From Hemiscyllium ocellatum (Eukaryota): 64,000 nt of DNA. A program made the translations under genes and the position numbers. Where the stretch lies: NCBI RefSeq assembly GCF_020745735.1, contig NC_083428.1, forward strand, positions 28,582,001 to 28,646,000, written 5' to 3'. Under the pieces are notes generated by a model. The model was not told the origin of the DNA and searched no databases. It worked only from the letters and a program-made list of their open reading frames with translations. This document shows, piece after piece, positions 5,455 through 31,565 of the stretch; within the stretch, counting starts at the first letter, position 1, and every line of letters begins with the position of its first letter.

Positions 5455-8400
5455 TTACAGAATTAGACACATCCGTGAAGTCTGCACACATGCTTTGAGA
5501 CGCTTCTTTCGGTTTTCATTCAGCCTGGGTTTTGCAGGACAATTGTTCATCATGACAGGACTGTCTGAATAGTGCCTCTTATGGCTCCGGTGGAGAAGGA
5601 TGCGATAAGTCCCAGTGACGGGACTGTGACAGTCCCAATTAGGATTATTACAGATGTGCTCCTCTGTGATTCCCAGGCCTCTCAATGCCTTCTTCACCTC
5701 CTTTTCCTCTTCGTTTAGAGGGAGAGAACTGACTAGATGTGCTGGATTCAAGTGGAATGGTTGGTATGGCTCAGGACATTCCATTCCCTTCAGCCATGGA
5801 CTGTCCAGGATGTTGTCCAGGGTGTAGCGGTTTGTTGGAATGATTTGAAGAATTCCATGAATTAGTTTCCGGCAGGGATCTGATACATATGATGGAATTG
5901 TGTATGATCCTAGTAAAATGTACTTTTTCAGCTTCCTGATAGTTTCCGCACGGAAAGGCAAGGTTGCCGTCACCATGAAGTACAATAGGATGCCCAGGGC
6001 CCAGATGTCCACATGAATTCCAAAGTAGCTATTTTCTTTAAAGAGCTCAGGTGCTGCATATGGCGGAGAGCCACAACAGGTGTTTAAGGGTTCTGACAAA
6101 GGACACACTGCACTGAAGCCAAAGTCACCCAACTTCACACAGTTAGTAGCTGAGTAGAACACATTTTCTGCCTTGAGATCCCGATGGATCACATTGTTTT
6201 CATGCTGAAAAGGAAAATGGAAAGTTAAGCAAGTATGAAGGAAGGAAGGAAGGAATAGATGGGAAAAATTTGGAATTGATAGTAGATTAGTTTTAATAAA
6301 CATACCAGGCACACTGGAGCTATCACCAGCTCCAACTCCATCACTCCATTCCAACATTGACTTCTCCCCAGAGCATAGCCAAGATTAACATTTCTAAGGT
6401 TATTAAGAATAGAATAGAAGAATCATCTTAACCCTGCCTCTTTATTTCTCGGACAGACGTCTATCGGTCTTCAGTGCTTTGATATTCAGATAATATGGAG
6501 GGGGTCCCTAGATATATGTCCCACAAGTGAGGCCAGGTAAGTAATTCTCTTGGAGTTGGGATTCTATATGATTCTTAATGCCTTCCTTATCTGAATAAAG
6601 AGGTAATTCTTCTACAACGCACAGAGTGTCAGAAACAAACAGATCGAATTCAACAACACAATCTCAATTTGGTAATCTTCTCTTCATTTTCTGTTGCATC
6701 TACCCAGTCTTTTCTGATGGGTCTGCACTGTGGATTCCTTTCCTGCACTAGCCTCCTTTCCTGAACTCTGGATTGCTTTCTGACAATGGATTTCTTTCTG
6801 ACACTGGATTCTGTTAGTCAAGCACAGTTGGAAGATGGAGGAGGATAGAAAGCAACAGTGATATACACCTCCCAGTCAAGTTTAGTTGACAAATTGCTGC
6901 ATGACATTTTTTAAATTGTCACGTTTTTAACAGTTTTTAAAAAAATTCTTTGGGCTAGCATTTTCTCGCCCATCCCTAATTGCATTTGAATTGAGTGGCT
7001 TCTTCGGCCATTTCAGTGGGAAGTTGAGAATTAACCACATTACCGTCAATCTAGGGTCATGTCAACGTGGCAAGATTTCCTTCAGTAAAGGATATTAATA
7101 AGCGAAATGAATATTTTTAACCAACAATCAATGATAGTTTTATGGTCACCTTTACTGGGGGGTGTTTATAGTCCATATTTATTAATTAAGTTACAATTTC
7201 TTTAATTTCTAAAAGCTGCTGTCATAACATTCAAACCTATGTTCCCCAGAGCATTACTCTGAGCCTCAGAATTATTAGTCCGGTGACAATATTACTAAAT
7301 TACTGTTTCTATATCCTGTTTTGACTTCCATAAAGGCTGCCTTTACGGATTGTTTTTTCTTCCTTTCTCATGGTTGGTGCTGATGAGAATTTGAGGGACC
7401 CACAGAAGTTCTGATCCCAGATAAGGCAAATCCTATAAGCTTACTCGTGTCACTGAAAAATCAGGCCTCAAAGGACACAACTGATCACCATTAATCAGAC
7501 TGTTCAATTATCATGCTGAAGGGAGCCATGTCGCTGAATTCTAGAGTTGATGCTTTAGGGGCCCTCTTGCAGCAAAGTGGGGGTAGTGTCCCTACCTCTG
7601 GACCAAGAGACTAGGATTCAAGTTCTACTTGCTCCAGTGGTGGGTAATAACATCCCCTAATAGGTTGATTAGAAAAATAATTTTTTTTTAAAGAGATCAA
7701 GCTGTTGGAGCAACAACAGTCTGCTATTTTGCTCAGGCCAGAAGAACACAGGCCATTACTGCACCTGACCTTTAACCCCTTCCTAACTGAAGTTTGGAGA
7801 TTACATGCATCATTTTTTGACTACCCTCTTTACTTTTCTATGTATCTGATAATGTTGACCTGCCACAGAAAGAGTGTTTGTTGGATTATAGCTTATAGCT
7901 GGAGAAAGCTTCAGACTGTTTGCTGAGAAAATGGTTAAAGCTATGCCGACTTTCATATCACCAATTCACTGGATTATTGCAGATAATCTTGGATATGTTT
8001 AGGATCACAGGGCATGGGCCTATACACCCGAATTGCTAATTGGCATATTCTTACCTCACAGAATGTTCATGAAAATGCTTTTACTGTTACAGTTTAACTG
8101 CTATCACATCCATGTCAATATCCTTTTTTAAACATTTGGCTTTGTGATGGCTATTCATCAATAAATGTCTCAAGTTGTTCAAAAATCTCAACATCCTCAT
8201 TTCAAGGAGTCTCATCTGTCACCAAAGCTAAATATGATTTTCAGGCAATGCATGATTTGAAGTCTTGCAATATGAACTGATGCTGTCTTCACTCAGGACA
8301 ATATCATGGTAGATAACTACCTGCTTGTACTCAGGCGCAGTGTCACGTAGTGTTATGTATAATATTGTTCAGACAATCTCTGCATTCGAATGTGTTTCAC

Positions 8401-11400
8401 CAGCCCACTCACATGTGTCCTACTTGATAGAAACAGATGACGATGATGAACAGGAATTAATAATGCTCAGGAAACTTGGTAGCAAATACCATCTTGATCA
8501 TTGACCTTGGTCCTTGTGAAGGAACCAAAGTCAAGAGACATGGTCACATGCCAGTTGGTCATGCAGTGTTGTATAAATAAATGAGTACCAAATAAGTAAC
8601 TGCAATTCATTTTAGTGAAAAATTAGTCTTTTAAGACATGAGTAATATTTGGATGAGGGCAGAAGAAGAAAAGAATGACATACCTTGTAGGATCTTCTTC
8701 ATTTTCTGAATGTTGTGGCAACCTCTACACTATGCTGCTACCTGGTCATTCCATAAGGACTTTGAAGTATATAAAATTGATACTGCTTTCTTCCTCTCAC
8801 AATATCCTCTGGCAGTCTGAAAACTAAATGCAATCTGGTGGATATGTCAGACTTTAGTAATGATGCAGGAACGGAAAGATTATATAGATAATCGACCTTA
8901 AACGATTTGTCTTTAATATGAGATTGTCCATTAGGTGAATGTTTGGTACCAGTCTAATTTAGTCATGTGCAAAAAAGGCAATATCAACTTAATGATGTTA
9001 ATACAAGAGGCTTATTTTAAAGCCAAGACTACATCTCCACTTACCATATGTTTAACAGCTGATACAATCTGAATAAATATAAATTTACTCTCATATTCCA
9101 AGAGACGTCCCCTTGTGGAGACCTTGGTAAAAAGATCCCCTCCATCTGCATACTCCAAGACCAGGTACAGTCTAGATTGTGTTTCCAGCATCTCATACAG
9201 CCTGATGATATTTGGATGATGAAGTTGCTCCATACTCAGAATTTCGTTTATGAACAGTTGTCGTGACTTCTGGGTTATTTGCTTTTTATTCATGATTTTA
9301 ATTGCCACCTTTTCTACAAGTTACAGAGAGAAAGACACTCAATTATATTAATAATTCATAATATTTCAATATACCTGCAGAAGACAGGTGTCTGAATATT
9401 TGTCGCTTCTAGTAAATGCAAGTAGGCTATATTACAAACCTAACTGATCATCTTAAATTAGTTGTTAATGTACTCTTAGCACACTCAGAATTATTTAATA
9501 AATACTGCCCAATAGCATAATCACATGTAACATGAGAGATTACACCCTGACTTTTGTAAGCATGGATTCGTTGAGTATAGCAGTACGCTGCCTGTTAAAT
9601 ATGTGGAACTTCATATGCAGAGACATGTCCAGACATTGTACATTTTTAAGTAAGTAAAAGCATGAGGAATAATAGTCCCTGTGCATTTGTCATTGGCAAT
9701 CTCACAACCATAAGATCTGAACTGCCAACCAGTCAACATCACTTTTCTCATGCAGTACAAAATGTTCTACCCATTGAGACTTAACATTATTCTATCTGTG
9801 CTGCTGAGTGCAAGATGAAAGATTTTAACAGCATATCTCTTTTTGAAACAATACTTAAGTCTTGTTCCAAGTCAATACTCATGGGCTGTATATGTAGAGT
9901 TTTCTGAGCACCACTATACATCAGGATAGTGTGTACTAGGACACAAACAAAAATCTTTAATTTACTGAGATTGTGTATGCCGACTGGTACTATACTAGAA
10001 TAAGCCAAGCAGTTTTTAATATTTGGATGTTTTTATGTTGCTTTAATGTTGCCCCTTTCAATTTAATCACGATTGGTAATCTTCAGGACAATTTTATGTT
10101 AATGTTTGGATATAATGCAATTTTCGAGAAATGAGAATTGACAGAACAATGTTTCTTTATGATGTTATGACTGTAAACCCACACTGTTATGTAGGTACTG
10201 AGGCACAAAACACTTCATAACACAATATGATTCTACATCAAGTAACTGGAGCTTGCAAAGTAGTTGAATATCAGATTTATTAGTTAGGGTAAGGGTTGAG
10301 AGATTACTCAAGAGGCTGGAATTAAGGGAATAAAGACTTTAGGTGGAGATTGAAGGTAAGAAACAGAGGATCAAAAACAGAAAGAGTGTCTTAAATTTTG
10401 AAGTGGAATATAAACAAAACCAATGTTTGTCATAGAAGACAAGATTGCAAGGTCAGCAGGACTTGATGTGGGATATAATACAACATCCAAGTTTTGATGT
10501 GCAATAAAGTAATTATGGCACAGAAAGGGGTCTTTTGACTCATTGAATCCATGAGCTGAAGTAAAGGGAAAACAAAACGGTGAGTGAGCGATGAGATTTT
10601 AGCCCGGAACATTGAAGTAATCAAGTCTGAAGGCTCTAAAGGTATGAATTCACATTTTTATTTAATGCTAAATGGAATGAGGCAAGAGCAAAAATAGCTG
10701 ATGTTGTCCAAGTGTAAATAGTTGATCTTGTTACAGAGAAGACATGGGTTGAACATTCAACTTGGGAAAATAGGACCCTGAGGAGGCAAACAATTCCATT
10801 GAACTAGACAATGGAAGAGAGACTTTGGAGGGTAACCCAGTCACCAACCCTGTCAAAGGATGTGGAAAGGCTGATAAAGATGAGGATGAGTAATGGCCAT
10901 GTTCAGAGCAAATGTAATTAGAGAATCTGGTTAGGGATACCAAAATAAAGAGATTGAAGCATGGAATTGCATCAAACTGAACAAAACTTTGGAAGGCAGA
11001 ACCATATTGAATTAGTTTGCAGAAGGTGAGGCAATGACAATGACAGAGAGGTTGAGTTGTTCTTTTTAAAAAAAACACGACTTTCCAAGTATGGCAGTTT
11101 CAAAAGGGAGAATAACAGTATCTCAGGGCCTATTACAATGAAGGTTGAGAAGGGAAGTTCAGTTTCATAACTGTGGAGTCAAAGAAGCAGAAACTGGGTC
11201 TCAAGGATAAAAGAGGAGGGAGCAGAGAAACTAGACAAAACTAGTTCAGGGCTCAGGTGGGGGAGATGTGGAGGACAGTAGAGTTTGACTTTATGGCAAA
11301 GGAGAAGCAATGCAGTAAACGTTGAATGGATAGTCCCAGTCTCCTTTACAAAGGATTACTGTTGAAGTTTGGAGTGGTGATGCACAGAGGAAATGTGTTA

Positions 11401-13093
11401 AAGGCAACTGTTGGTCTTTTAGAAAAAAAGCTAAGAGCTATCTTTGCCTCCCAGAAGTGGTGGGTGGTTTTGGCAAATGAGGCAGAGGTTGATTGGTCTG
11501 TTGATATTTAGCTAGACAAGATGCATGGAATATAAGATTGTCAGTGGTAAATGAAAACATTGAGAAGGAAGATAGAAAGCAAAGGGTTTTTAAGAGACTG
11601 GTATATGAGAGATGTGTCTGAACAAACTGAAGACTGCTTAAGTGATGAAGGTCCATGAAATCTTTGAAATATGGAAATACACCAACTCATGCAGCTAAAG
11701 CTACATCGTCCACCTTATGATGTGGGCCACTCAGGATAAGAGGCTGAACTGCCAACTGTTCCTAAGTTCAAAGCCAAGGCATCCTACACAAATAAAGACT
11801 TGGTAGTACTACTATAACAACATTTATCGATTAACACAATCCTATCATGGGATCACCAATAAAGAAATATTTGACTAAGTACTCCAACTATCGAGATCAA
11901 GTTGAGCCGTCCAATTTGAAAATGTTAAAAAAAATGTTATCTTCATTACTCCAAAAAAGGCAAATAAAATGTAAAGAAGATACTCTCACCATCCACATTG
12001 TAAAAACTCATGTGAATGTTAACTGTAATCAATTGGTGCTGAACCTGAAATAGTAACAAATTACCTTTGCTGATAGTGGTTGTGTCTGTGATCATCTATG
12101 GAAGTATTCCTAGTGCAGGTTTTCTAGTGCTCTAAATGGGCCATGTTTCCAAATTAACTTGTGTTTGTTAGTCTTTGTGCTTCAGAAAACCCACAACTAA
12201 ATGCTTCGGTCACAGATGATGGTTGCTGTCAATGAGACTTCGTTATTAATTGAATGGAGGTGGATGCTGAAAAACTGCAGTACACAGAAACTCAGTGAAT
12301 CAGGTGGCATGTGTAGAAAATGAAATCAAATTAATATTTTAAGTTCTTCTGAAGAGTCATAATGGACATTTTCTGAAGGAGAGTCAAATTGGACTTGAAA
12401 TGTTAGCTGTTTCCGTTGCCACAATTGCTGCCAGATCTGCTGAGATTTTCGAGCACTTTCAGTTTTTATTTCAGGTTCCCAAATTGTCATTTTAACAATG
12501 TCAAAAATTGGTGATGATTGTCAGTGGTATTTTCCTCTGCCAGTTTTAATGAATGGTTTAAAGATGCATTGCTTGATGCATTAAGCTCCATACTGTTTCG
12601 TAATGTTTAGTTTAGAATGTAATGCTACTATTACATTGTTTCACAATATATTACAGAATCATAGTATGGCACCAAGTATTATAAAGCAGACAGATTGTTG
12701 TTTATAATCTGGATACCAGTATAAATTGTCTCTTGTGAAAATGGAGACAACCTCTAATCAGCCAGACTGCTCAGTATATAGAATAGGAATGGGTCAGGTA
12801 AACATACCTTTTGTCAAGCAGTGTATTCCAAGCTTCACTTTTGAAAAGTTCCCAGTGCCAATTTCTCCACGGAGTTGGTAAAATCCAATCCTTTTTCCAA
12901 GTATCAGGTCATTTTTAACTTTCTTGCTATTCTTCATGTCATAAATAACTTTCTCAAATGGTGAGAGTAAGATGTTTTGTTCCTCTTCTTTCTCCTCATC
13001 CATATGGCGTTGCATCTGCCATTTAATACTTCGTGTTGTGCCGAGGTAACCCCTCAAACTCTCGTTGTGAACAGAAAGATTTGCAACAGCCAT
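5455..13093 (-). CDS. nim1k: NIM1-like serine/threonine kinase (AMPK-related family); exons 13093-12808, 9313-9045, 6204-5455; 434 aa
   Basis: Exon 1 ...GKRIGFYQLRGEIGTGNFSKVKLGIHCLTK with donor G|GTATGT at 12807. Exon 2 (E)KVAIKIMNK...HPNIIRLYE...AVKHM|GTAAGT. Exon 3 HENNVIHRDLKAENV...DFGFS...CGSPPYAAPELF...CLIL*. Phases 1 and 0 join in frame (286+269+750=1305 nt). Orthologue versus paralogue of NIM1K is not resolved. Confidence 0.92.
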
Positions 13094-14019
13094 CAATAAG
13101 GTTCACAGGTTGTGTCTGATAAACTGGAATTTCTTCCTCAAAAAAAAGTCTGTCAAAGCTGGTAGGAAGTTCCCCTTTAAAGGAGCATCCTCTCAATGCA
13201 TTAGTTGATCCTCATTAAATTTTATTTCATTTAAGTTCCTAATGAGCTCTTTTCTTAAAAGATCCTTTCCAAGTTTGCAGTTGTACTTCAGAAAGCCCAG
13301 GACTAAATGCTTCTGCCACAGATGATGGCCGTTGGCAATGAGACAATAATATTATTACTTCATAATCGTTTGGGTAGACATTGAAAAATATTCACTTTGT
13401 CTTCCCCTTAATGGGAGATCTTTTAATTTTTCAGACAATGACTGAATGTATTCTGTGATGACACTGGAAGAAAAATAAACGTAATTTTGATAATGGACAG
13501 TCAGTAGATCTGTGCAAAGAATGTTATTTGATAAGGTGCACAAAATCTATTGTCTGATTTATAAAATAGCAAGAGATCAACCCATAGAGAACTATTTCAT
13601 GTTGTTGAAAAACTGTGATTGGAATGTCTATGTTCAACAAGTTATGCAGTACAAAGTTATTTTCCCCTACCAAGTATACATCCAATTTTCTTTTTAACTT
13701 ATTTAACATCTTCACTTTCATTACCCTTGGAGGCAACAAGTTCCAGGCCATTACCATTCAATTCTTAAAACAAAACATCACCCTCATACTCTTGCGCAAA
13801 ACATTATGTCTGTGTCACCTATACCTGGTACCACGAGCTAATGATAACTGTTTTTCTTCAATGAGGCATAAGGTGTTTCTGAAACTTCAGATGTCAGCCA
13901 AGAATATGGCTCTACTCTTTAAAGAGTGACAATCCCACTCTTCCTGTGACCCTTTGACAGTCCCACTTTAAAGCAAGGTGTAGGTTCACTACCAAATAAA
14001 ATTCGAAACAACTGTGAAT

Positions 14020-16547: not shown

Positions 16548-16750
16548 ATGTGCAGTGGTTAGCACTGCTGCCTCATAGTGCCAGGTATTCGGATTCGATT
16601 CCAACCTTGGTGACTGTCTGTGTGGAGTTTGCACATTCTCCCTGTGTCTGCATGAGTTTCCTGGGTTGCGATGTCTCTCGGAGGGTTGGTTTGGATTGAA
16701 TGGGCTGAATATCCTGCTGCCACACTAAAGGAATTCTATTCTATTCTAGT
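16548..16750 (+). mobile_element. Internally deleted HE1-like V-SINE
   Basis: gcagtggttagcactgctgcctca head and tgtggagtttgcacattctccc V-domain, followed by a truncated tail. Confidence 0.7.
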
Positions 16751-22229: not shown

Positions 22230-23073
22230 GCAAATGTGTTGCTGGTCAAAGCACAGCAGGCCAGGCAGCATCTCAGGAATAGAGAATTCGACGTTTCGAG
22301 CATAAGCCCTTCATCAGGAATAAGAGAGAGAGAGCCAAGCAGGCTAAGATAAAAGGTAGGGAGGAGGGACTAGGGGGAGGGGCGATGGAGGTGGGATAGG
22401 TGGAAGGAGGTCAAGGTGAGGGTGATAGGCCGGAGTGGGGTGGGGGCGGAGAGGTCAGGAAGAGGATTACAGGTTAGGAGGGCGGTGCTGAGTTGAGGGA
22501 ACCGACTGACACAAGGTGGGGGGAGGGGAAATGAGGAAACTGGAGAAATCTGAATTCATACCTTGTGGTTGGAGGGTTCCCAGGTGGAAGATGAGGCGCT
22601 CCTCCTCCAGCCATCGTGTAGTTGTGTTCTGCCGGTGGAGGAGTCCAAGGACCTGCATGTCCTCGGTGGAGTGGGAGGGAGAGTTAAAGTGTTGAGCCAC
22701 GGGGTGATTGGGTTGGTTGGTTCGGGCGGCCCGGAGGTGTTATCTGAAGCGTTCCGCAAGTAAGCGGCCTGTCTCACCAATATAGAGGAGGCCACATCGG
22801 GTGCAGCGGATGCAATAGATGATGTGTGTGGAGGTACAGGTGAACTTGTGGCGGATATGGAAGGATCCCTTGGGGCCTTGGAGGGAAGTGAGTGTGGAGG
22901 TGTGGGCGCAAGTTTTACATTTCCTGCGGTTGCAGGGGAAGGTGCCGGGGGTGGAGGTTGGGTTGGTGGGGGGTGTGGATCTGACGAGGGAGTCACGAAG
23001 GGAGTGGTCCTTGCGGAACGCTGATAGGGGAGGGGAGGGAAATATATCCTTGGTGGTGGGGTCCGCTTTTTTA
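22230..23073 (-). mobile_element. 5'-truncated Penelope-like retroelement: GIY-YIG endonuclease domain plus terminal repeat
   Basis: PCNRRKCKTC...IIYCIRCTRCGLLYIGETGRLLAERFR*HL...PVAQHFNSPSHS...EERLIFHLGTLQPQGMN, with a single stop at 22740-22742. Flanked by a 14-bp direct repeat TTCTTCACTATCCT (22216-22229 and 23074-23087). Confidence 0.9.
22286..22321 (-). ncRNA. Minimal type I hammerhead ribozyme motif in PLE terminal repeat
   Basis: Minus strand ATTC-CTGATGA-A-GGGC-TTAT-GCTC-GAAA-CGTC-GAAT. Complete core, 4-bp stem I (ATTC/GAAT), 4-bp stem II, loopless palindromic stem III (ACGT). Predicted cleavage after the C at 22290. Confidence 0.75.
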
Positions 23074-23346
23074 TTCTTCACTATCCTACCTACCTGTGAC
23101 TCTATTTTCAAGGAGCTGTGAACCTGCACTCCAAGGTCTCTTTGTTCAGCAACACTCCCCAGGACCTGATCATTAAATGTATAAGTCCTGCTAAGATTTG
23201 CTTTCCCAAAATGCAGCACCTCACATTTATCTAAATTAAACTCCATCTGTCACTTCTCAGCCCATTGACCCATCTGGCCAAGATCCTGTTGTAATCTGAG
23301 ATAACCTCCTTCACTGTCCACTACACCTCCAATTTTGGTGTCATCA

Positions 23347-23790
23347 GCTGCCAGAGGAATACAACATTTAAAAGACATTTGGAGGAATATGGGCCAAGTG
23401 CTTACAAATGGTCATTGGGTAGCACAGTGGATCGCACTGCTGCCTCACAGCACCAGGGACCCAGTGAGGGGGACTGTCTGTGTGGAGTTTGCACATACTC
23501 CCTGTGACTGTGTGGGTTTCCTCTGGGTGCTCCAGTTTCCTGCTACCATCCAAAGATGTGCAAGTCAGGTGAATTGGCTATGCGAGGTTGCCCATAATAT
23601 TCAGGGATGTGTAGGTTAGGTTCATTAATCAGGTGTAAACAGGGTAGGGCAGATCTGTGTGGGTTCCCTGTTTCCACAGGCTAGGTATTTATCCTCTTCT
23701 AAATGGGACGAGATTAGATTAGGACATCTCGTCAACATGGACGAGTTGGACGGAAGGGTCTGTTTTCATGCTCTGTATCTCTGTGATATC
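23347..23790 (+). mobile_element. CR1 3' end fragment with inserted HE1-like V-SINE (about 23417-23690)
   Basis: gctgccagagga...acaacatttaaaagacatttgg and gaagggtctgttttcatgct CR1 tail pieces flank a SINE head and V-domain. Confidence 0.7.
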
Positions 23791-23859
23791 TCGTTAACAT
23801 CTGCTGAATTTTTCCAGCAAGGGCCCTTCTTGTAACTGCTGTGCTACTTATTGCAGCCT

Positions 23860-24590
23860 CTTAAACCTGATTGGTTAGCGATGTTAATGCTGCACCACCT
23901 CATTGGACTACAGTGTAACTGTCGTGTTTATTAGACCACTAACTCTCTATTCGTGGTTGGTGTTTCTATCCAGTGTTGTGATTGGCGGAGGGGGGGGAGA
24001 GGACGTGTTGCCATTGGTGAAGGTGATGACGGCGCGCTGCGTTTGGCGGAGGCGGTGACGGCGCGCTGCGATTGGCAGAGGGGGTGAGGGTGCGCTGCGA
24101 TTGGTGGAGTGGGGTGAGGGCGCGCTGCGATTGGCGGAGGGGGGTGACGGCGCGTTGCGATTGGCGGAGTGGGGTGACGGCGCTGCGATTGGCGGACGGG
24201 GGTGACGGCGCGCTGCGATTGGCGGGGGATGACAGCGCGCTGCGATTGACGGAGGGGGGTGACAGCGCGCTGCGATTGACGGAGGGGGGTGACGGCGCGC
24301 TGCGATTGGCGGAGGGGGGTGACGGCGCGCTGCGATTGGCGGAGTGGGTTAACGGCGCGCTGCGATTGGCGGAGTGGGGTGACGGCGCGCTGCGATTGGC
24401 GGAGTGGGTTAACGGCGCGCTGCGATTGGCGGAGTGGGGTGACGGCGCGCTGCGATTGGCGGAGTGGGGTGACGGCGCGCTGCGATTGGCGGAGTGGGGT
24501 GACGGCGCGCTGCGATTGGCGGAGTGGGGTGACGGCGCGCTGCGATTGGCGGTTCGGAGAGCAGCAGGCGGTGAGGCGGGAAGGCGGTTG
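23860..24590 (+). promoter_or_regulatory. POLE4 CpG-island promoter with tandem inverted CCAAT (NF-Y) boxes
   Basis: ATTGG at 23870, 23902, 23981, 24013 and in most minisatellite units up to 24545, 46 bp before the ATG. The minus strand reads GCCAATCGCAG. No obvious TATA box. Confidence 0.7.
23975..24553. repeat. 30-bp GC-rich minisatellite, consensus TGCGATTGGCGGAGTGGGGTGACGGCGCGC, about 18-20 units
   Basis: Exact 30-bp period from 24241 to 24550; more diverged units toward 23975; five CpG per unit. Confidence 0.95.
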
Positions 24591-27500
24591 ATGGAGGAAC
24601 GCGAGAGCGGAGTGGGGCTGCAGCAAGCGGGGGAGTCGGCGCAGAGCCTGCAGCCGGAGGTCGAGGTGGAGAGGCCGGGCCTGCAGCATAAACTGCTCCG
24701 GCTGCCGCTGAGCCGGATCAAGGGACTGATGAAGGCTGATCCCGATGTGTCGCTGGCGAGCCAGGAGGCCGTGTTCGCCATCGGCAAGGCCACGGTGAGT
24801 GAGTGGTGGCCACCCCGACCCCCTGGAGAGAGCCATCGGCGGCCGCTAGAGGCCCTGACGGTCACTGTGACCTCCTCCCGGGTGCAGTCCATTGGGTCTC
24901 TGCCCGCGTTCCTTCATTGATCATGGTCTGGGCTGGTCGGTGAAGGTGCAGAGTATATTTACCAGAATAATCTCCAGCAGTTAAATTACAAATAGAGACG
25001 ACACAAATTAAGAAAAAAAATGTAAAATGCTGGACATTTTACCAGAACTTCTCTAGTGTAGCCCATTCCTGGATAATAGGTTAAACATCAATTACTCTAG
25101 AGACCTGGCCACTAAAATAAAACTCAAACGTTGGTGCAGTTTCTGAACCGTTATCAATATAACTTTTCCCCGTTTATATAGATGCTACTAGATTAAAGAG
25201 CATCATCAAAATGATAGAGCCCGACTTTTAAAAATAAAACGGACTCATCAACATACAAAGGCTTCATCAGAGGCTCACTGATGATGTTGGGGGTCAAGAT
25301 CAGAGTGGTGCTGGAAAAGCACAGCAGGTCAGGCAGCATCTGAGGAGCAGGAAAGTCGATGTTTCAGGCAAAAGCTCTTCATCAGGATGAGGCTGGGAGC
25401 CTCAGGGGTGGAGAGATAAATGAGGAGGGGGGCTGGAGAAAGGTAGCTAAGAGTGCAATAGGTGGATGGAGGTGATAGGTCAGAGGGGACGGTGGAACGG
25501 ATAGATGGGAAGGAAGATTGGCAGGTGGGACAGGTCATTAGGGCGGTGCTGAGCTGGAAGGTTGGGTCTGGGGTAAGGGTGGGAGGGAGAATGAGGAAAC
25601 TGGTGAAATCCACGTTGATGCCATGGGGTTTGTTGGGACAGATCCTCTGTCCCCGTGTTCGTTTGGAGGAGAGAGACACCGGGTCTGATTAAAAGTATAA
25701 ACAGGTTTAATGAGAGAGAATCGTACACAGTACAGTGAGGTGTCTAGCTCACTGGAGAAGGCGTGTTCTGCCTATTTTTTTAATTTGTCTATCCTTTTGT
25801 TCTCTCACATTCCAGAGTTACATCCTTATTTGGTAAAATGCAGAATTTTCGTGTGTCATTGGTTCTCACCTGATAACGTTCTATTACCTCAGTTTGAGCT
25901 ACGTGCGTTTAGACATGGCTCCAATGTCCTGTTATCTCTCACCCTCCCTGGGGCTTCTTCAGGCTATGCCATCAGCTTTTCAGTCTGTTCTTAGTGTAAC
26001 ATAATGGCTTACTGTTGTCTAGTGAAGCCAACAAGTTCCAGACTTGCTAATACTACCTTACGTGAGCACTACCTAACAATAAAGTTTCTTACACTATCTA
26101 ACCTTAATAATGGATCCCAACAGGCTGAAGGGTCCCAAGGCGAAAGATAAGGCATTCTTCCTTCAGGCATCGGGTGGTGAGGAAGCGGCGGTGGAGGAGG
26201 CTCAGGACCTGCATGTCCTTGGCAGAGTGGGAGACTGAGTTGAAATGTTTAGCCACAGGGCAGTGGGGTTGATTGATGTGGATGTCCCGGAGATGTTCTC
26301 TGAAGCATTTTGTAGAGGAGACCGCATTGGGAACAACTGTACAGTAAATGACCTGTGTGGAAATGCGGGTGAAACTTTGATAGATATGAAAGGCTCCTTT
26401 CTGGCCTTGGATGGAGGCGAAGGGGGTGGGGGGGGAGGTTTTGCAGTTGCTGCGGTGACAAGGGCAGGTGCCAGGAAGGGAGGGTGGGTTATTAAGGGGT
26501 GTGGACATGACCAGGTAGTCGCGGAGGGAACAATCTTTACGGAAAGTGGATGGGGTGGGGACGGAAACATATCTCTGGTGGCGGGGTCTGTTTGTAGGTG
26601 GCGCAAATGGTGGAGGTTGCTGGGGTGGAAGGTGAGGACCAAGGGGTTTTGACCATGTTGCGTCTGAGGGGTGGGGTTCGAGGGTTGAGGTGCAGAGCGT
26701 GGATGAAATACGTGGAGAGCATCATCAACCGTGTGGGAGGGGAAATTGTGGTCTTTAAAGAAGGAGGCCAGTTGATGTGTTCTGTTGTGGAACTGGTCCT
26801 CCTGGGACCATATGAGGTGAAGGAATTGGGAATAATGGATAGCATTTTTGCAGGAGGTAGGGTGGGAGGAGGTGTAATCCAGGTAGCTGTGGGGGTCACT
26901 GATGATGTTACCTAGTATGGTGATGAAACGTCTGAAAATAAACCTTCTAGCTCAGCAAACTTACATCCAGAACCTCAACCTGAGCTGCGAATCTTCTCAA
27001 AACTTGCTATCTTTTTCCATAAATCAGTCATGTATATCTGTTTAGCATTTTAGAAGTTCTAATTTTAATTTTTCAGCTTCAGTTAATTTATATCACTTAT
27101 AAAGACTGATATGATGTATAATCATTAAATTCTTGATGACAGTGACATTGCTCACCTTGCATAAGAATGCGTTAATTTAGATTAAGACTTAAGGAAACTT
27201 CAATCTTGGCATCATATTATTAATTGCTAATGAGGCAAAAGCAACCTGTCTCTGTGGGGAGGGATACAAAGGTTTGCCTGAGGGAGGAAATGCTGCTTCT
27301 GCTCAGGAAAGAGATTAGAGCTGTAGGAGAGTTGGAGCTGTATACTGGGTTCCTTGAGAGAGAGAGAGAACGTATTCTGAACAAACTGGGTATCCCATTG
27401 ACTGAACAATGTATTTGGTTTCTCCCAACAGGAACTATTTGTTGAAGTGATTGCGAAGGATGCATATTCATTCGCTTTGCGGGGAAAACGCAAAACTATC

Positions 27501-30500
27501 CAGCGAAAGGATGTGGGTGAGTCTGCCAGCAATTTGTTATTCCAGACTGCTACTTTGTTGTCAGAGTATACTCAAGAGTCTTTCTAGGATTATAACTTTT
27601 GTGAGTGGCTGAGTTTTAAAGTCATACAGCCATAGAGATGTACAGAACAGAATCAGAACCTTTGGTCAAACTCATCCATGCTGACCAGATATCCTAAATT
27701 AATCAAGCCACACTTGCCAGCTTTTGGCCCGTATCGCTTTAACCCCCTCCCATTTATATACCCGTCCAGATGACTTTTAAATATTGTAATTGTACCAATT
27801 TCCACCGCTTCCTCTGGCAGTTCATTCCATACACGCACCACCCTCTTCATGAAAAGGTTGCCATTTAGATCCCTTTTAAATCTTTCTCCTCATCTTAAAC
27901 TTATGATCTCTAGTTTTAGAACCTCCTACCCTGGGGAAAAGACCTTGACTATTAATCCTATCCATGCCCCTCATGATTTTATAAACTTCTTTATGATCAC
28001 CACTCAGCCTCTGATGCTCGAGGGGACATAGCTTTAAATTGAGGGGCGATAAATATAGCTCAAATGTCCGATGTAGTTGTTTTACTCAGGGTATAGTGAA
28101 GTGGAATGCACTGCCTGCAACAATAGTAACTGCAACTTTAAGGGCATTTAAATGTCATTGGATAGGCATATGGACGAGCATAGAATAGTGTGGGTTAGAT
28201 GGACTTCAGATTGGTTCCACAGGTTGGTACGGTATGGCCTGTACTGCACTGTAACGTTCTATGCTCTGTGCTCTATTCAGCCTCACCCTATACTCAAACC
28301 TTCCAAACCTGTGAACTGTGAACCTGCACTCCTCGTTTACTTTGTTTGGCAACACTCTCCAGGACCTTACCTTTAAGTGTGTAAGTCCTGTCCTGATTCG
28401 CAGCACTAAAATGTAGCACCTCACATATATCTGGATTAAACTCCATCTGCCATTTTTGGCCCATCTGATCAAGGTCTTGTTGTACTCTTAGTAACCTTCT
28501 TCAGTGTCCATTACACCATCAATTTTGGTGTCATCTGCAAACTTGCTAACCATACTTCCTGTATTCACATCCAAATCACTTAAGTGCTGAGCTAAGTTTG
28601 TTTGCGGAGTGGGGGTGCAAAGGTGAAATAGTCAGTTGTTGTTTTGTTTGGAAGTTATCCAAATTGCTAGATGGTTTATTTTTATTTCTCTTTCAGACAA
28701 TGCAGTTGATGCTACAGATGAATTTGCATTTTTGGAAGGTGAGTGCTTCCTCATTGCTTCACAGCTTTAACTTTGTTTTGTCTGTCATTTTCTCCTAATT
28801 CTTCTGTCAATCCTTCTTAGCCCAGGGGAGAAGGCATTGCTGCAACAAGGTGCAACAGACAAAATTATCTTAAGTTGAGGTACTAATATGAATGCTCAAA
28901 CTTGTTGAATTCCACGATCTTTCAAGACTGTTGTTCATCTTTCATGGAAGCAATAATTCTACTAATACAATGTACCGTTCTATTCACTCAATCACTTCTC
29001 TAACCTATTCTTAAAAGTACTCTTAATCAAACTGTTGGGACATCTTTTTTTATTCATGATGAGGGAGTCGCTGGCTAGACCAGCATTTATTACCTAACAC
29101 TAATTGCCCAGAGAGCAGTTAAGAGTTAACCACATTGATGTGGGTCTGGAATCACATGTAGGCCAGATCAAATGAGGACATTAGTGATCAGATGCGTTTC
29201 TGAGCCAACAGTCCAGCAATAATACCAATAGGCCATCATCTCCCCTTAATGAGGCACAGCTGACACACATGGGACTTGAACCCAGACCTTTTGGCCCACT
29301 GATGGGAGCATTACCTCTGATACAAGATCTGCTTACCCTATTCTTAACTATTGACATACTTTTTGCTTTATTCATATTTTGGTATTGCACTTCACAGCTT
29401 CACATTTGTTTTTTTATCCTAACTTGCTTGTTTATAATCTTCTTTCGTTCCCCTGTAAATAGTTTCTGTACATTGTCACACCTCTTTATGATTTTAGTAT
29501 TTATCACATCACTCATAATAGTATTGTACCCAATTGTGACCTTATGATTATATTCACTATGCCATTTTGACTCTTATTTTAAACATCTTAAAACTCAATA
29601 TTGTATAAGCTTATCTCTTTACACTCTTATCCTGCTGCTTTTAATGTCTTATTTATCTGAATTCCAAATCCCTCTTCATTTCCACATTGCCTGGCTTTCA
29701 CTTCAATTACTAGGTTATTACATTTCTCGCTCAATTCTCCCTCTCAAACAACTCAAAATAATTAACAGACTGTGAACTACTTTGAGACGTGCTCAGATCA
29801 CTAATGTGAAATGTTAATGCTGTTTGCTTCTTAGAATTAACTTTACTGTCACATGTACTCACATGAGTATAGTGAAAAGTTTACAAGTCACCACTTACGG
29901 TACCATGTTAGGTACAAGAGTACGTAAGCACAGATTCTTAAGTATAGATTCTTAGGGGTACATTAGAAAAATTCAAAATCATAGGAATAAAATAAATAAA
30001 TGAATGTGTTTTTTAATTAAGAATTGCAGTCCTTCCAACCCAGTCTGCGACAGTACCTAGCCTCCAGACTACAAAAGGACTAAAAAATTACATAAATAGA
30101 GTTCATCATCTGAACAAGGGGTCTACAACACAAATACACTGCTTTTGCAAAGTCCCCAGCCAGAAGTCTTTGCTCCAGGCACCACGTCCACCGAGTCGAA
30201 GCTTCAGGCACCACCACCATCACTGCATCCAAAGACCCCCCGAGTCCCCACTACTGGCCTACCACAGGTAGAAACCTTTTTTTGGGCACAGTCATGACTA
30301 GTGACCCTCCGAGTCCAGGCACTAGGCCTACCGCAGTCAGGAATCATCACTCCGGGCACTGTCACCACCGCAGTTAATCAACATTTCTCCTGATTCCCCA
30401 TGACATCAGAAAATAACAAAAAACGCCATTCCCCCTCCTATCTTTCTATCCTTCCTATAGTATCTATATCCTATACTCTACCAGTCTTGTGCATCCCTGA

Positions 30501-31443
30501 GCTACGTTTCCATAATAGCTATGATATCCCAGTTCCATGTTGTCAACCATGCCCTAAATTCATCTGCCTTGCCTGTCAGGCCTGTTGCATTGAAGTAGTA
30601 TGACCTGAGGGGTAACTTATTCATGCAGAGGGTGGTGCATGTATGGAGCAAGCTGCTAGAGGAAATGATGGAAGTGAATACAATTATAATGTTTAAAAGG
30701 CCTCTGGTTATATGAATACAAGGGATTTAGAGGCATATGGGCCAAATGTTGGCAATTAGGACTGGGAAATCAATTGGGAGGAGTGGGACCAAAGAGTCTG
30801 TTTCCATATTGTATGACTGACTATCTAATGAAGACAAAATGGAAAGAAAAGAAAAAGATAGCAGATAAGCTCCAGGCTCCTGGGCTTAGGACCCCACCTG
30901 CTGCATTGCTACCCCACTGCTATCTTGAGAAAGAATCACAAATACTGTATAACTTTGAAATTTTGGGCCTTTGTTCGTTTCATATTTTCTGCGTTTGCAG
31001 TGTTTTGCTTTTGATTCAATTAATTTTTTCTTTCTCTCTCTCCCTTCACTTTCTTGCCCCCTCCGTCTTTTTCCTCCTGTATGGTTATGCTTGTATGCCA
31101 CACTTTATTTCGTGGTTATCTTTCTTGATATAGAATTTTTTTACTGGCACTTTTGTTGGCTCTTAATGGGAAAAGTAGTGTGTGAATGAAGAAAATTGGT
31201 TTCCACCCTGATTGTTTTGAAATGATGATTCTAAATGATCTGATTGTTTGAGTCCCTAAATCAGTTTGATCCAAGGAACACCATTATTTTTCCCAGGTTC
31301 TGATGGTGCCACTGCAATTCTATAAAGGTGGACTTTGCAATAGTCACTGTTTCTTGGTCTGCATTTTGTTAACATAATTGCTTCCTGTGTGTATGTTCCA
31401 GAGAATTTCAGTGCACTTTATTCTTCCAGGAACTCTGGACTGA
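24591..31443 (+). CDS. pole4: DNA polymerase epsilon subunit 4 (H2A-like histone fold); exons 24591-24794, 27432-27516, 28697-28738, 31430-31443; 114 aa
   Basis: MEERES...RLPLSRIKGLMKADPDVSLASQEAVFAIGKAT|ELFVEVIAKDAYSFALRGKRKTIQRKDV|DNAVDATDEFAFLE|GTLD*. All three donors are GTGAGT and all acceptors CAG. Phases 0, 1, 1 (204+85+42+14=345 nt). Confidence 0.95.
25289..26895 (-). mobile_element. Degraded Penelope-like element (RT C-terminus, GIY-YIG, tail) interrupted by a solo LTR
   Basis: Minus peptides MVLTFHPSNL...HLQTDPATRDMFPSPP and FREHLRDIHINQPHCPVAKHFNS...LIFRLGTLQP. Tail has a decayed hammerhead (CTGATGA at 25385-25379, GAAACATC). 14-bp TSD TCACTGATGATGTT (25275-25288 and 26896-26909). 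Confidence 0.85.
25631..26122 (-). mobile_element. Solo LTR (492 bp)
   Basis: Termini TGTTGGGA...TCCCAACA (8-bp inverted, TG..CA). Near-identical 4-bp flanks GGTT/GGCT. ATTAAA on the minus strand near 25706. The PLE sequence resumes on both sides. Confidence 0.75.
26896..26935 (+). ncRNA. Minimal hammerhead ribozyme motif of a second, probably PLE-derived, repeat family
   Basis: TCA-CTGATGA-T-GTTACC-TAGTAT-GGTGAT-GAAA-CGTC-TGA. Full core, 6-bp stem II, ACGT stem III, 3-bp stem I (TCA/TGA). Confidence 0.65.
27620..28580. mobile_element. Cluster of CR1 LINE fragments in POLE4 intron 2 (minus about 27620-28020, plus about 28020-28275, minus about 28275-28580)
   Basis: MKRVVRVWNELPEE peptide, CR1 3' tails, and the reverse complement of the FADDTK-region DNA (ttttggtgtcatctgcaaactt). 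Confidence 0.75.
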
Positions 31444-31565
31444 ATTGGAACCAAGCTTCACAAGAGGCCAAATTGACTATAGAGAGCTGTGTTCAAAGGT
31501 TCTCACTATATGTGTATGTATATTTTGTATAATCTGTAAAAAGGTTGTTGTATCTGTAATGATTG

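What the first reader, a model, noticed from the sequence alone, without database searches (positions are those of the whole stretch)
23860..24590. POLE4 promoter is an expanded minisatellite of about 17 phased CCAAT boxes
Seen: each 30-bp unit holds an inverted CCAAT box in good NF-Y context (GCCAATCGCAG), a GC-box-like GGCGGAGTGGGG, a TGACG half-site and five CpGs. The array ends about 40 bp before the ATG. Four boxes at the upstream edge form two pairs spaced 32 bp apart (23870/23902 and 23981/24013), and units are most homogeneous next to the gene. Established: cell-cycle and replication promoters typically use two or three CCAAT boxes about three helical turns apart, and POLE4 is itself an NF-YC-like histone-fold protein. 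Inference: an ordinary CCAAT module was amplified into a VNTR that forms the CpG island and could tune POLE4 expression by copy number. It might also drive the divergently oriented kinase gene.
Basis: partly seen in the sequence, partly recalled or inferred. Interest (0 to 1): 0.7.

Follow-up and report, generated by a model that had tools for sequence, protein, structure and literature searches.

The report
Amplified CCAAT-box array at shark POLE4 promoter
In the epaulette shark a 30-base promoter segment carrying a CCAAT box has been copied about twenty times just upstream of the DNA-replication gene POLE4; other sharks have six single boxes there and skates grew their own array, so this is a real but fairly ordinary promoter minisatellite with an informative history.

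Summary
A 30-bp tandem array (TRF 24027-24552, 17.8 copies, 91% match) ends 38 bp before the POLE4 ATG at 24591. Two degenerate older units extend it back to 23981. It holds 17 intact inverted CCAAT boxes, and two older non-repeat boxes lie at 23870 and 23902. It forms the only CpG island in the 64-kb window.

Orthologous promoters show where it came from. Whale shark and sevengill shark have no array. Each has six same-orientation boxes 25-59 bp apart within about 240 bp of the ATG, followed by a conserved E2F-like GGCGGGAA. The whale shark holds the 30-bp unit as a single copy between its two proximal boxes. Two skates carry a separate 26/51-bp CCAAT array at the same spot, with 33 and 18 boxes and an unrelated spacer.

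So an ancient multi-CCAAT plus E2F promoter was amplified at least twice. No data support copy-number tuning: boxes inside the array vary as freely as other positions, and relatives manage with six. Sharing with the kinase gene is unsupported; its start codon is 11.5 kb away. The transcription start is inferred, not measured.

This scan has already noted similar promoter arrays elsewhere in this genome (PLPBP, SNAPC5, EMC8, DAXX). Verdict: a new member of a known kind.

The parts
23796..23868 (+). Distal edge of the conserved promoter. Homology with whale shark resumes here after a block of about 2.5 kb (21300-23795) that is absent from whale shark.
   Evidence: blastn: window 23796-23908 matches L004 15621-15728 at 81%. 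Window 20957-21294 matches L004 15162-15499.
23870..23906 (-). Ancient distal pair of inverted CCAAT boxes (ATTGG at 23870 and 23902, 32 bp apart). They are single-copy and not part of the repeat.
   Evidence: Both boxes and the block between them are conserved in whale shark and sevengill shark. They do not align to the repeat unit.
23956..23960 (-). Decayed third box. It reads GTTGG here; the whale shark has ATTGG in the same aligned columns and the sevengill has an ATTGG shifted by 2 bp.
   Evidence: MAFFT alignment.
23981..24041 (-). The two oldest, degenerate units of the array (ATTGG at 23981 and 24013).
   Evidence: Global alignment to the unit consensus: p = 0.0015 and p < 0.0005 against shuffles.
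24027..24552 (-). Core minisatellite: 30 bp x 17.8 copies. It has 15 intact inverted CCAAT boxes, all in CCAATCG context, five CpGs per unit and GC skew +0.45. The gene-proximal units are identical.
24575..24582 (+). E2F-like GGCGGGAA, 16 bp before the ATG. It occurs only once in the window.
   Evidence: Conserved at -16 to -17 in all five elasmobranchs examined. The frog has TTTCCCGC at about -43.
24591..24794 (+). POLE4 exon 1 coding part (68 codons, GT donor at 24795).
   Evidence: Exon 1 as read spells the first 68 residues of P0017 (comparison by eye).
27432..27516 (+). POLE4 exon 2.
28697..28738 (+). POLE4 exon 3.
31430..31541 (+). POLE4 exon 4: last codons, stop at 31441-31443 and 3' UTR. 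The approximate polyA site is inferred from the retrocopy.
5458..13096 (-). Divergently oriented protein-kinase gene. Coding exons were seen at 12797-13096, 9015-9308 and 5458-6357.
   Evidence: Pfam Pkinase, E = 6.8e-35 and 1.1e-21. The same kinase(-)/POLE4(+)/TGF-beta(-) order occurs in skate, whale shark and sevengill.

Best explanation
The array is a lineage-specific minisatellite. It was made by tandem amplification, about 19-fold, of the 28-30 bp interval between the two gene-proximal CCAAT boxes of an old elasmobranch POLE4 promoter. That promoter already had six inverted CCAAT boxes in one orientation, 25-59 bp apart, followed by an E2F-like GGCGGGAA just before the start codon. This is the classic TATA-less layout of replication and cell-cycle genes.

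Shown here: the array is real, its progenitor unit exists as a single copy in whale shark, the flanks are orthologous, and skates made an independent array at the same place.

Inferred: the direct repeat of the two boxes seeded slippage or unequal exchange. Growth continued at the gene-proximal end, where the units are identical. Transcription starts in the roughly 45 bp between the last box and the ATG, so the boxes sit at about -20, -50, -80 and so on from the start site. NF-Y binds at least the proximal boxes. The 30-bp spacing exceeds the 24-bp minimum for adjacent NF-Y trimers, so the whole array could be coated and kept nucleosome-free and unmethylated.

Most of the extra copies are probably redundant. 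Copy number is probably only weakly constrained rather than a tuned dial.
For: - Array statistics.
- Box clusters. Rhincodon has six ATTGG at -216 to -47 and Heptranchias six at -236 to -45, against a background of 1.1-1.4 per kb (Poisson P = 7.5e-8 and 3.2e-7). Every box is in the same orientation. All but one carry a CCAAT[C/G][A/G] flank.
- Orthology. A three-shark alignment shows orthologous boxes and the single-copy progenitor in whale shark.
- Independent skate arrays. Leucoraja has an array at 9415-9986 and Rhinoraja at 5652-5972. Their spacer is unrelated to the shark unit (3 of 12 identical bases after the box), yet they lie between the same conserved box E and the E2F-like site.
- E2F-like site. 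GGCGGGAA occurs once in the window and is conserved in five species.
- Transcription start. A Chiloscyllium retrocopy carries only about 21-30 nt of 5' UTR and no array unit. The H. ocellatum retrocopy product P0001 also reaches only about -21.
- Homogeneity gradient toward the gene.
- CpG island. Array CpG o/e is 1.3-1.5 against about 0.6 in unexpanded relatives.
- Literature. NF-Y sits at -40 to -100 from the TSS (PMC3730095). Direct CCAAT repeats peak at 31 bp, with a 24-bp steric minimum (PMC4982600).
- Assembly. It was built from PacBio long reads from a library averaging 54 kb, which span 0.5 kb easily (PMC10587355).
Against: - No transcript, CAGE, NF-Y binding or methylation data could be reached, so the TSS and factor occupancy are inferred.
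- Retrocopies are often 5'-truncated, so they give only a minimum 5' UTR length.
- Whale-shark RefSeq isoforms X1 and X2 (P0003, P0002) begin in upstream exons and splice across the CCAAT region into an acceptor 15 nt before the ATG. Some transcription can therefore start upstream in that species.
- The 5' flank of the repeated box (CCGCCAAT) fits the RR preference only at -1.
- 30 bp is 2.86 helical turns, not exactly three.
- Recurrent amplification at one orthologous promoter in two lineages could also reflect selection for more boxes, which would make the redundancy view too weak.
Confidence: 0.65

Rival explanations
1. Adaptive dosage dial. Selection favoured more NF-Y sites, and unit number sets the POLE4 transcription level, so the array is a functional VNTR.
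For: - Amplification of CCAAT-bearing units happened independently at the same promoter in hemiscylliid sharks and in skates, and both skates retain it.
- All units keep the same orientation, and unit lengths (30 and 26 bp) are at or above the 24-bp NF-Y minimum (PMC4982600).
- Precedents exist: the ABO CBF/NF-Y minisatellite (PMC7187371) and human VNTRs associated with expression of nearby genes (PMC8024321).
Against: - Two of 5 box columns vary against 17 of 25 other columns (Fisher p = 0.33), and three units have broken boxes.
- Whale shark and sevengill express the same highly conserved protein from six boxes.
- The two skates differ nearly twofold in box number (33 against 18).
- In skates many boxes are 13-14 bp apart and cannot all be occupied at once (24 of 33).
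- Unit length may simply inherit the ancestral box spacing.
- Scan notes report many other promoter minisatellites in this genome, some carrying unrelated motifs (unchecked).
Confidence: 0.15
2. The array is not the promoter. Transcription starts well upstream, and the array is 5' UTR or intron, a neutral GC-rich minisatellite whose CCAAT boxes are irrelevant.
For: - Whale-shark models have upstream first exons that splice over the CCAAT region.
- A matching AG acceptor context (cagcag|g) is present in the window at about 24567.
- The array is open in the POLE4 frame.
Against: - The boxes and the E2F-like site are conserved in position and orientation across sharks and skates, and partly in a frog. 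Neutral intron sequence would not show this.
- The whale-shark upstream exon is not conserved in the window: the donor is lost and TE insertions abut 23796.
- H. ocellatum RefSeq isoforms all start at MEERESG.
- Retrocopies carry no array units.
Confidence: 0.1
3. Shared bidirectional promoter. The array also drives the divergent kinase gene through a non-coding first exon lying next to it.
For: - The head-to-head kinase/POLE4 order is conserved from skate to shark.
- The array is the only CpG island in the window.
Against: - The kinase ATG is 11.5 kb away here, and 3.9-8.7 kb away in relatives.
- About 2.5 kb of lineage-specific insertion lies directly upstream of the promoter.
- A deeply conserved block at 17134-17669, where a whale-shark alternative exon also starts, is a better candidate for a separate regulatory element or promoter.
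- No conserved minus-strand exon with a splice donor was seen next to the boxes.
Confidence: 0.07
4. Assembly artefact. The copy number, or the array itself, comes from mis-assembly or polishing of long reads.
For: The assembly was built from noisy PacBio CLR reads (PMC10587355). A short-read Chiloscyllium assembly has a gap at this exact spot.
Against: - A 0.57-kb array is far shorter than the reads.
- The units carry an ordered pattern of variants: alternating TTAA units 11 and 13, paired ATTGA units 8 and 9, and CpG-transition variants in older units.
- Independent assemblies of two skates show the analogous structure.
Confidence: 0.03

Closest known systems
Human ABO upstream CBF/NF-Y minisatellite enhancer (43-bp unit, one or four copies; Kominato 1997, reviewed in PMC7187371)
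   Same: It is a tandem minisatellite whose units each carry a CCAAT motif bound by NF-Y. Copy number differs between alleles and was proposed to alter transcription.
   Different: It lies about 3.8 kb upstream and acts as an enhancer. It has at most four copies and its in-vivo relevance is disputed. The shark array abuts the start codon, has about 20 units and derives from the core promoter's own boxes.
ERV-9 / LTR12 U3 tandem repeats (up to 14 CCAAT + GATA repeats; PMC3730095, PMC4982600)
   Same: Many same-orientation CCAAT boxes in tandem units, at spacings at or near the 24-bp NF-Y minimum. They are strongly NF-Y bound in human cells.
   Different: They are retroviral in origin and dispersed as a repeat family. 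The shark array is single-locus, with its progenitor in the orthologous single-copy promoter.
Twin or multiple CCAAT cell-cycle promoters (for example TOP2B with boxes 32 bp apart; 31-bp peak in human NF-Y promoters, PMC4982600)
   Same: Same-orientation boxes about three helical turns apart, TATA-less, in a replication or cell-cycle gene, combined with GC-rich and E2F-type elements.
   Different: Human promoters of this class are described there as CCAAT dimers. The ancestral elasmobranch POLE4 promoter had six boxes, and the epaulette shark has 19.
Human promoter VNTRs associated with expression of nearby genes (PMC8024321)
   Same: Minisatellites at or near promoters that multiply regulatory sequence.
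   Different: For the human cases polymorphism and expression association are measured. Here neither is known.
Other promoter arrays noted by this scan in the same genome (PLPBP 28 x 26 bp, SNAPC5 24 x 20 bp, EMC8, DAXX)
   Same: The same species and the same pattern: a promoter-proximal CCAAT module amplified into a 20-30 bp minisatellite. For PLPBP, a 6-7-box version is reported in a skate and in the sevengill.
   Different: They are different genes and different units. Those notes are unchecked by me. The POLE4 case adds a second, independent amplification in skates at the same promoter.

Membership tests
Minisatellite / promoter VNTR | Head-to-tail units of about 10-100 bp, several copies, at a single locus | tested here: met
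   30 bp x 17.8 copies at 91% match. The unit occurs nowhere else in the window.
Minisatellite / promoter VNTR | Located in the promoter or 5' region of a gene | tested here: met
   It ends 38 bp before the POLE4 ATG. It lies inside a promoter block that is orthologous across sharks.
Minisatellite / promoter VNTR | Copy number variable among individuals (the 'V' in VNTR) | not testable with these tools
   Only one haplotype is available. Between species, Leucoraja has 33 boxes and Rhinoraja 18 in the analogous skate array.
Minisatellite / promoter VNTR | Copy number associated with expression | not testable with these tools
   No expression data were available.
NF-Y-dependent multi-CCAAT promoter | Intact CCAAT pentamer with favourable flanks | tested here: met
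   All 19 boxes are CCAAT[C/G][A/G]. The 5' RR preference is only half met in the repeated unit. The flank consensus is from my own knowledge of the NF-Y literature.
NF-Y-dependent multi-CCAAT promoter | Boxes at least 24 bp apart, typically about 31 bp, in the same orientation | tested here: met
   Spacings are 27-32 bp within the array, and all boxes are on one strand. The thresholds come from PMC4982600.
NF-Y-dependent multi-CCAAT promoter | A box positioned about -40 to -100 from the TSS | tested here: inconclusive
   The TSS is unknown. If it lies at about -20 to -40 from the ATG, as the retrocopy 5' ends and the E2F-like site suggest, then the boxes at 24485 and 24515 fit.
NF-Y-dependent multi-CCAAT promoter | NF-Y occupancy and dependence | not testable with these tools
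   This needs EMSA, CUT&RUN or reporter assays.
E2F/CCAAT replication-gene promoter | E2F-type site close to the start site and conserved | tested here: met
   GGCGGGAA at 24575 is unique in 64 kb and conserved in five elasmobranchs. The frog has TTTCCCGC. This is a sequence-level result only; binding was not tested.
CpG island | GC > 0.55 and CpG o/e > 0.65 over at least 500 bp | tested here: met
   The 500-bp windows starting at 23751-24501 have GC 0.58-0.71 and o/e 0.88-1.52. It is the only such region in the window.
Bidirectional promoter | Divergent start sites less than about 1 kb apart | tested here: inconclusive
   The start codons are 11.5 kb apart. No 5' non-coding exon data exist, and nothing found supports sharing.
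LTR12/ERV-9-type TE-borne CCAAT repeats | The repeat belongs to a dispersed transposable-element family | tested here: not met
   The progenitor is the single-copy orthologous promoter. There is no other copy in the window.

The most novel reading that the evidence does not exclude
Elasmobranch genomes may have a general, recurrent process that amplifies promoter-proximal NF-Y modules into 20-30 bp minisatellites. It would strike the same promoters independently in lineages separated since the shark-skate split, and it would manufacture strong CpG islands from weak ones. The cause could be NF-Y-bound, nucleosome-free promoters acting as hotspots for slippage or unequal exchange. Alternatively, slow-evolving, low-mutation genomes may favour gains of redundant boxes. 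POLE4 would then be one clear, datable example of a lineage-wide mode of promoter evolution, with two independent amplifications plus a small 25-bp duplication in whale shark.
Probability: 0.2. Interest if true: 0.7.

Novelty: new member of a known kind. Interest (0 to 1): 0.42.

Why it matters
Taken alone, this is one more promoter minisatellite. The comparative series makes it more useful. It shows step by step how a multi-site promoter grows: six boxes in sevengill and whale shark, a 2.2-copy duplication in whale shark, about 20 units in the epaulette shark, and separate 13- and 22-unit arrays in two skates.

The same promoter expanded in parallel in sharks and skates. The expansion turned a weak CpG island into a strong one. 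If the other arrays reported in this genome hold up, elasmobranchs offer a natural system for two questions: whether homotypic NF-Y site clusters are selected or simply tolerated, and how CpG islands can arise by amplification. The published epaulette-shark pedigree (two parents and nine offspring) would allow a direct measurement of array mutation rate and any effect on expression.

Tried and rejected
1. Fetching the H. ocellatum parent and retrocopy loci, C. plagiosum and Mustelus returned no DNA because the files were too large. P0017 and P0002 were not on record.

2. The C. punctatum orthologous promoter is an N gap in a short-read assembly.

3. Two protein searches used translations of the array: one on the minus strand, and one in the POLE4 reading frame on the + strand. 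They were meant to find transcript- or contig-derived ORFs in other samples. Both were blank, which says little.

4. A test for stronger constraint on the ATTGG core inside the array showed no difference.

5. TE origin of the unit was rejected.

6. The GC-box and TGACG sub-motifs in the unit were considered as additional factor sites. Only the CCAAT box and the downstream GGCGGGAA are conserved across species. TGACG reads TGACA in whale shark and is absent in sevengill, so these are not claimed.

7. I considered the idea that sharks lack PRDM9 and therefore have promoter recombination hotspots. The literature shows PRDM9 orthologues in cartilaginous fish with uncertain domain completeness (PMC5519329), so this remains speculation.

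8. An autoregulatory link through POLE4's NF-YC-like fold has no evidence and was not pursued.

Full report
**What is there.** Reading 23500-25100 and running Tandem Repeats Finder confirm a 30-bp tandem array at 24027-24552, with 17.8 copies and 91% matches. It is the only strong tandem repeat in the 64-kb window. The consensus 30-mer matches 14 times with up to 3 mismatches, only in this array, against zero in shuffles. Anchoring on GCGATTGG gives 18 units. Fifteen have an intact ATTGG, units 8 and 9 read ATTGA, and unit 1 reads TTTGG. Four more ATTGG lie upstream, at 23870, 23902, 23981 and 24013. All 19 are on the + strand, that is, inverted CCAAT relative to the gene, and there is no forward CCAAT in 23800-24600. 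The array ends 38 bp before the ATG at 24591.

**Array boundary.** The two segments headed by the boxes at 23981 and 24013 align significantly to the unit consensus (p = 0.0015 and p < 0.0005 against shuffles). The segments at 23870 and 23902 do not. The array therefore really runs from 23981 to 24552.

**Polarity.** Identity to the last unit rises toward the gene, and the last four full units are identical. Units 11-14 form a 60-bp higher-order duplicate.

**Composition.** The region is the only CpG island in the window: GC is about 0.70 and CpG o/e 1.3-1.5, against about 0.0-0.6 in the flanks. The coding strand is strongly G-rich, with GC skew +0.45.

**The genes.** The downstream gene is POLE4. 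Its exons are 24591-24794, 27432-27516, 28697-28738 and 31430-31443. Read together, they spell the 114-aa P0017 (my comparison by eye). P0017 is named DNA polymerase epsilon subunit 4 isoform X2 in both Hemiscyllium ocellatum and Chiloscyllium punctatum. The exon pieces hit the histone-fold family PF00808. Intergenic DNA is only 91-93% identical to C. punctatum, so the window is not that species. This agrees with the scan's earlier guess of epaulette shark. Upstream, on the minus strand, is a protein-kinase gene (Pfam Pkinase). Its first coding exon ends at 13096, which is 11.5 kb from the POLE4 ATG.

**Orthologous promoters in other sharks.** Using POLE4 proteins found, I fetched loci from five other species. 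Whale shark (L004, same order) and sevengill shark (L005, a deeply diverging shark lineage) have no array. Each has six ATTGG boxes, all in the same orientation. They lie at -216 to -47 in whale shark and -236 to -45 in sevengill, relative to the ATG, with spacings of 25-59 bp. Background is 1.1-1.4 per kb, giving Poisson P = 7.5e-8 and 3.2e-7.

**Where the unit came from.** A three-shark alignment shows that the promoters are orthologous end to end. The distal pair (window 23870 and 23902) and the block between them are conserved. A third box has decayed to GTTGG in the window (23956). The proximal boxes and the last 25 bp before the ATG are also conserved. The whale shark holds, as a single copy between its two proximal boxes, a sequence clearly homologous to the epaulette-shark unit (ATTGG-TGGAGGGGTGACAGCGCG-TTTTG-ATTGG). 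The array is therefore an amplification of the interval between ancestral proximal boxes, which I call E and F. Whale shark also has its own small 25-bp x 2.2 duplication of a neighbouring box.

**A parallel array in skates.** Little skate (L003) has a tandem array at 9415-9986: about 22 units of 26 bp with 51- and 130-bp higher-order periods, 33 ATTGG boxes, ending 15 bp before the ATG. A second skate, Rhinoraja (L006), has the same repeat family in shorter form: 5652-5972, 6.3 x 51 bp, 18 boxes. The skate spacer is unrelated to the shark unit, with 3 of 12 identical bases after the box. Even so, the array lies between a conserved ATTGGTGGAG box and the same proximal element. The amplifications are therefore independent events at the same place. 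A frog (L007) has one inverted box, at -69.

**A conserved E2F-like site.** GGCGGGAA occurs once in the 64-kb window, at 24575, 16 bp before the ATG. It is present at -16 to -17 in all five elasmobranchs, and the frog has TTTCCCGC at about -43. With the CCAAT boxes, this gives the classic TATA-less CCAAT plus E2F layout of replication genes. That description is from established knowledge; binding was not tested here.

**Where transcription starts.** I could not reach RNA data. Two indirect clues exist. The first is a retrocopy. L001 in C. punctatum is an intronless POLE4 copy with a polyA tail. Its homology to the parent begins only about 21-30 nt before the ATG and includes no array unit. The H. 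ocellatum 'POLE4-like' protein P0001 comes from another intronless copy (366 nt), and its N-terminal extension also reads parent 5' UTR only to about -21. Retrocopies can be 5'-truncated, so this gives a minimum UTR length. The second clue is that E2F sites usually lie near start sites. Both clues fit a start in the roughly 45 bp between the last box and the ATG. That would put boxes at roughly -20, -50, -80 and -110. NF-Y normally sits at -40 to -100 (PMC3730095).

**A caveat on the start site.** Whale-shark RefSeq isoforms (P0002, P0003) start in upstream exons, at L004 15549-15626 and near L004 10001, and splice over the box region into an acceptor 15 nt before the ATG. The nearer exon is not conserved in the window, where its donor is lost.

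**How it probably works.** Two direct repeats of the box 28-30 bp apart make a natural substrate for slippage or unequal exchange. This step is inferred. The spacing of 27-32 bp exceeds the 24-bp steric minimum for adjacent NF-Y trimers and is close to the 31-bp peak of human promoter CCAAT dimers (PMC4982600). In principle all 19 boxes could be occupied at once. All boxes carry the CCAAT[C/G][A/G] flank. A fully occupied array would be a 0.6-kb nucleosome-free, unmethylated platform. This fits the very high CpG o/e, whereas the unexpanded relatives have only weak islands (GC about 0.52, o/e about 0.6).

**Is copy number functional?** I found nothing in favour. Inside the array, 2 of 5 box columns vary against 17 of 25 others (Fisher p = 0.33), and three boxes are broken. 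Relatives with a nearly identical protein use six boxes. The two skates differ almost twofold in box number. Many skate boxes are 13-14 bp apart and cannot be bound together: only 24 of Leucoraja's 33 boxes are spaced 24 bp or more apart. Earlier notes of this scan list similar arrays at PLPBP, SNAPC5, EMC8, DAXX, TAF15 and WBP1. They also list minisatellites multiplying other motifs at POLR1E, UBE2J2, PELP1 and ARPC3, all in this same genome. These are unchecked AI notes. If true, they point to a genome-wide mutational tendency rather than a POLE4-specific adaptation. Parallel expansion in two lineages still leaves some room for selection.

**The kinase.** The kinase(-)/POLE4(+)/TGF-beta(-) order is conserved from skate to shark. 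The start codons are 3.9-11.5 kb apart. In the window, about 2.5 kb of sequence absent from whale shark (21300-23795) abuts the promoter edge at 23796. A deeply conserved non-coding block at 17134-17669 lies between the genes. A shared promoter cannot be excluded without RNA data, but nothing supports it.

**Reliability of the assembly.** The H. ocellatum reference was built from PacBio long reads (library averaging 54 kb) with trio binning (PMC10587355). A 0.57-kb array with an ordered pattern of unit variants is unlikely to be an artefact. The exact unit count could be off by a little.

**Comparison with known systems.** NF-Y-binding minisatellites are known, for example the ABO upstream 43-bp repeat (PMC7187371). 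So are TE-borne CCAAT repeat arrays, such as ERV-9/LTR12 with up to 14 repeats (PMC3730095). Human promoter VNTRs are associated with expression of nearby genes (PMC8024321). The shark array differs in being the core promoter's own proximal module, amplified about 19-fold, directly against the start site. It is a new member of a known kind. The added value is the reconstructed history and the parallel skate expansion.

Noticed in passing
window 17134-17669 (core about 17410-17560): A deeply conserved non-coding block lies between the kinase gene and POLE4. It is 74% identical over 554 bp to the sevengill shark and 82% over 88 bp to the little skate. It is AT-rich with homeobox-like TAAT cores. 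The first exon of whale-shark POLE4 isoform X1 (L004, about 10001) falls inside the whale-shark segment that aligns with this part of the window (window 16746-18496 = L004 9481-11249). It is a candidate enhancer or separate promoter.
   Followed up: partly
L001:9975-10445 (C. punctatum) and protein P0001 (H. ocellatum, 126.7-Mb contig): Hemiscylliid sharks carry intronless POLE4 retrocopies with intact reading frames, 114 and 121 aa long, each differing from the parent by 1-3 residues. L001 has a polyA tail. RefSeq names the H. ocellatum copy 'POLE4-like'. Whether the two are orthologous, and whether they are expressed, is unknown.
   Followed up: partly
L002:8900-10001 (at least; the start of the gap was not read) (C. 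punctatum BEZZ01000245.1): In the short-read C. punctatum assembly, the POLE4 promoter and the 5' half of exon 1 are an assembly gap. The annotated protein (P0018) is consequently partial.
   Followed up: no
L004:15549-15626 and L004 about 10001 (Rhincodon typus): Whale-shark POLE4 models X1 and X2 add N-terminal extensions from upstream exons. These splice across the CCAAT region into an acceptor 15 nt before the conserved ATG. The extensions have no counterpart in other species' POLE4 proteins and may reflect read-through or alternative promoters.
   Followed up: partly
window 21300-23795: This block is absent from the whale-shark orthologous interval. It is packed with TE-like ORFs (reverse-transcriptase-like and SINE-like pieces), and the scan separately noted a Penelope-like element with a hammerhead motif at 22286. 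It ends exactly at the conserved edge of the POLE4 promoter.
   Followed up: partly
window 34316-40263 (-): A TGF-beta family gene lies tail-to-tail with POLE4. The mature domain hits PF00019 (E = 3e-35) and a propeptide exon lies at 39949-40263. Its position is conserved in skate, whale shark, sevengill and Chiloscyllium.
   Followed up: partly
L006:6264-7000 (Rhinoraja longicauda): A large 16/56-bp purine-rich minisatellite (GAGGGATGAGAGGATG, about 49 copies) begins about 260 bp downstream of the POLE4 ATG in this skate, presumably within intron 1 (the exon 1 boundary in L006 was not mapped).
   Followed up: no
L005:5395-5734 (Heptranchias perlo): G-rich 11/21/22-bp tandem repeats of about 340 bp lie in the kinase-POLE4 intergenic region of the sevengill shark.
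   Followed up: no
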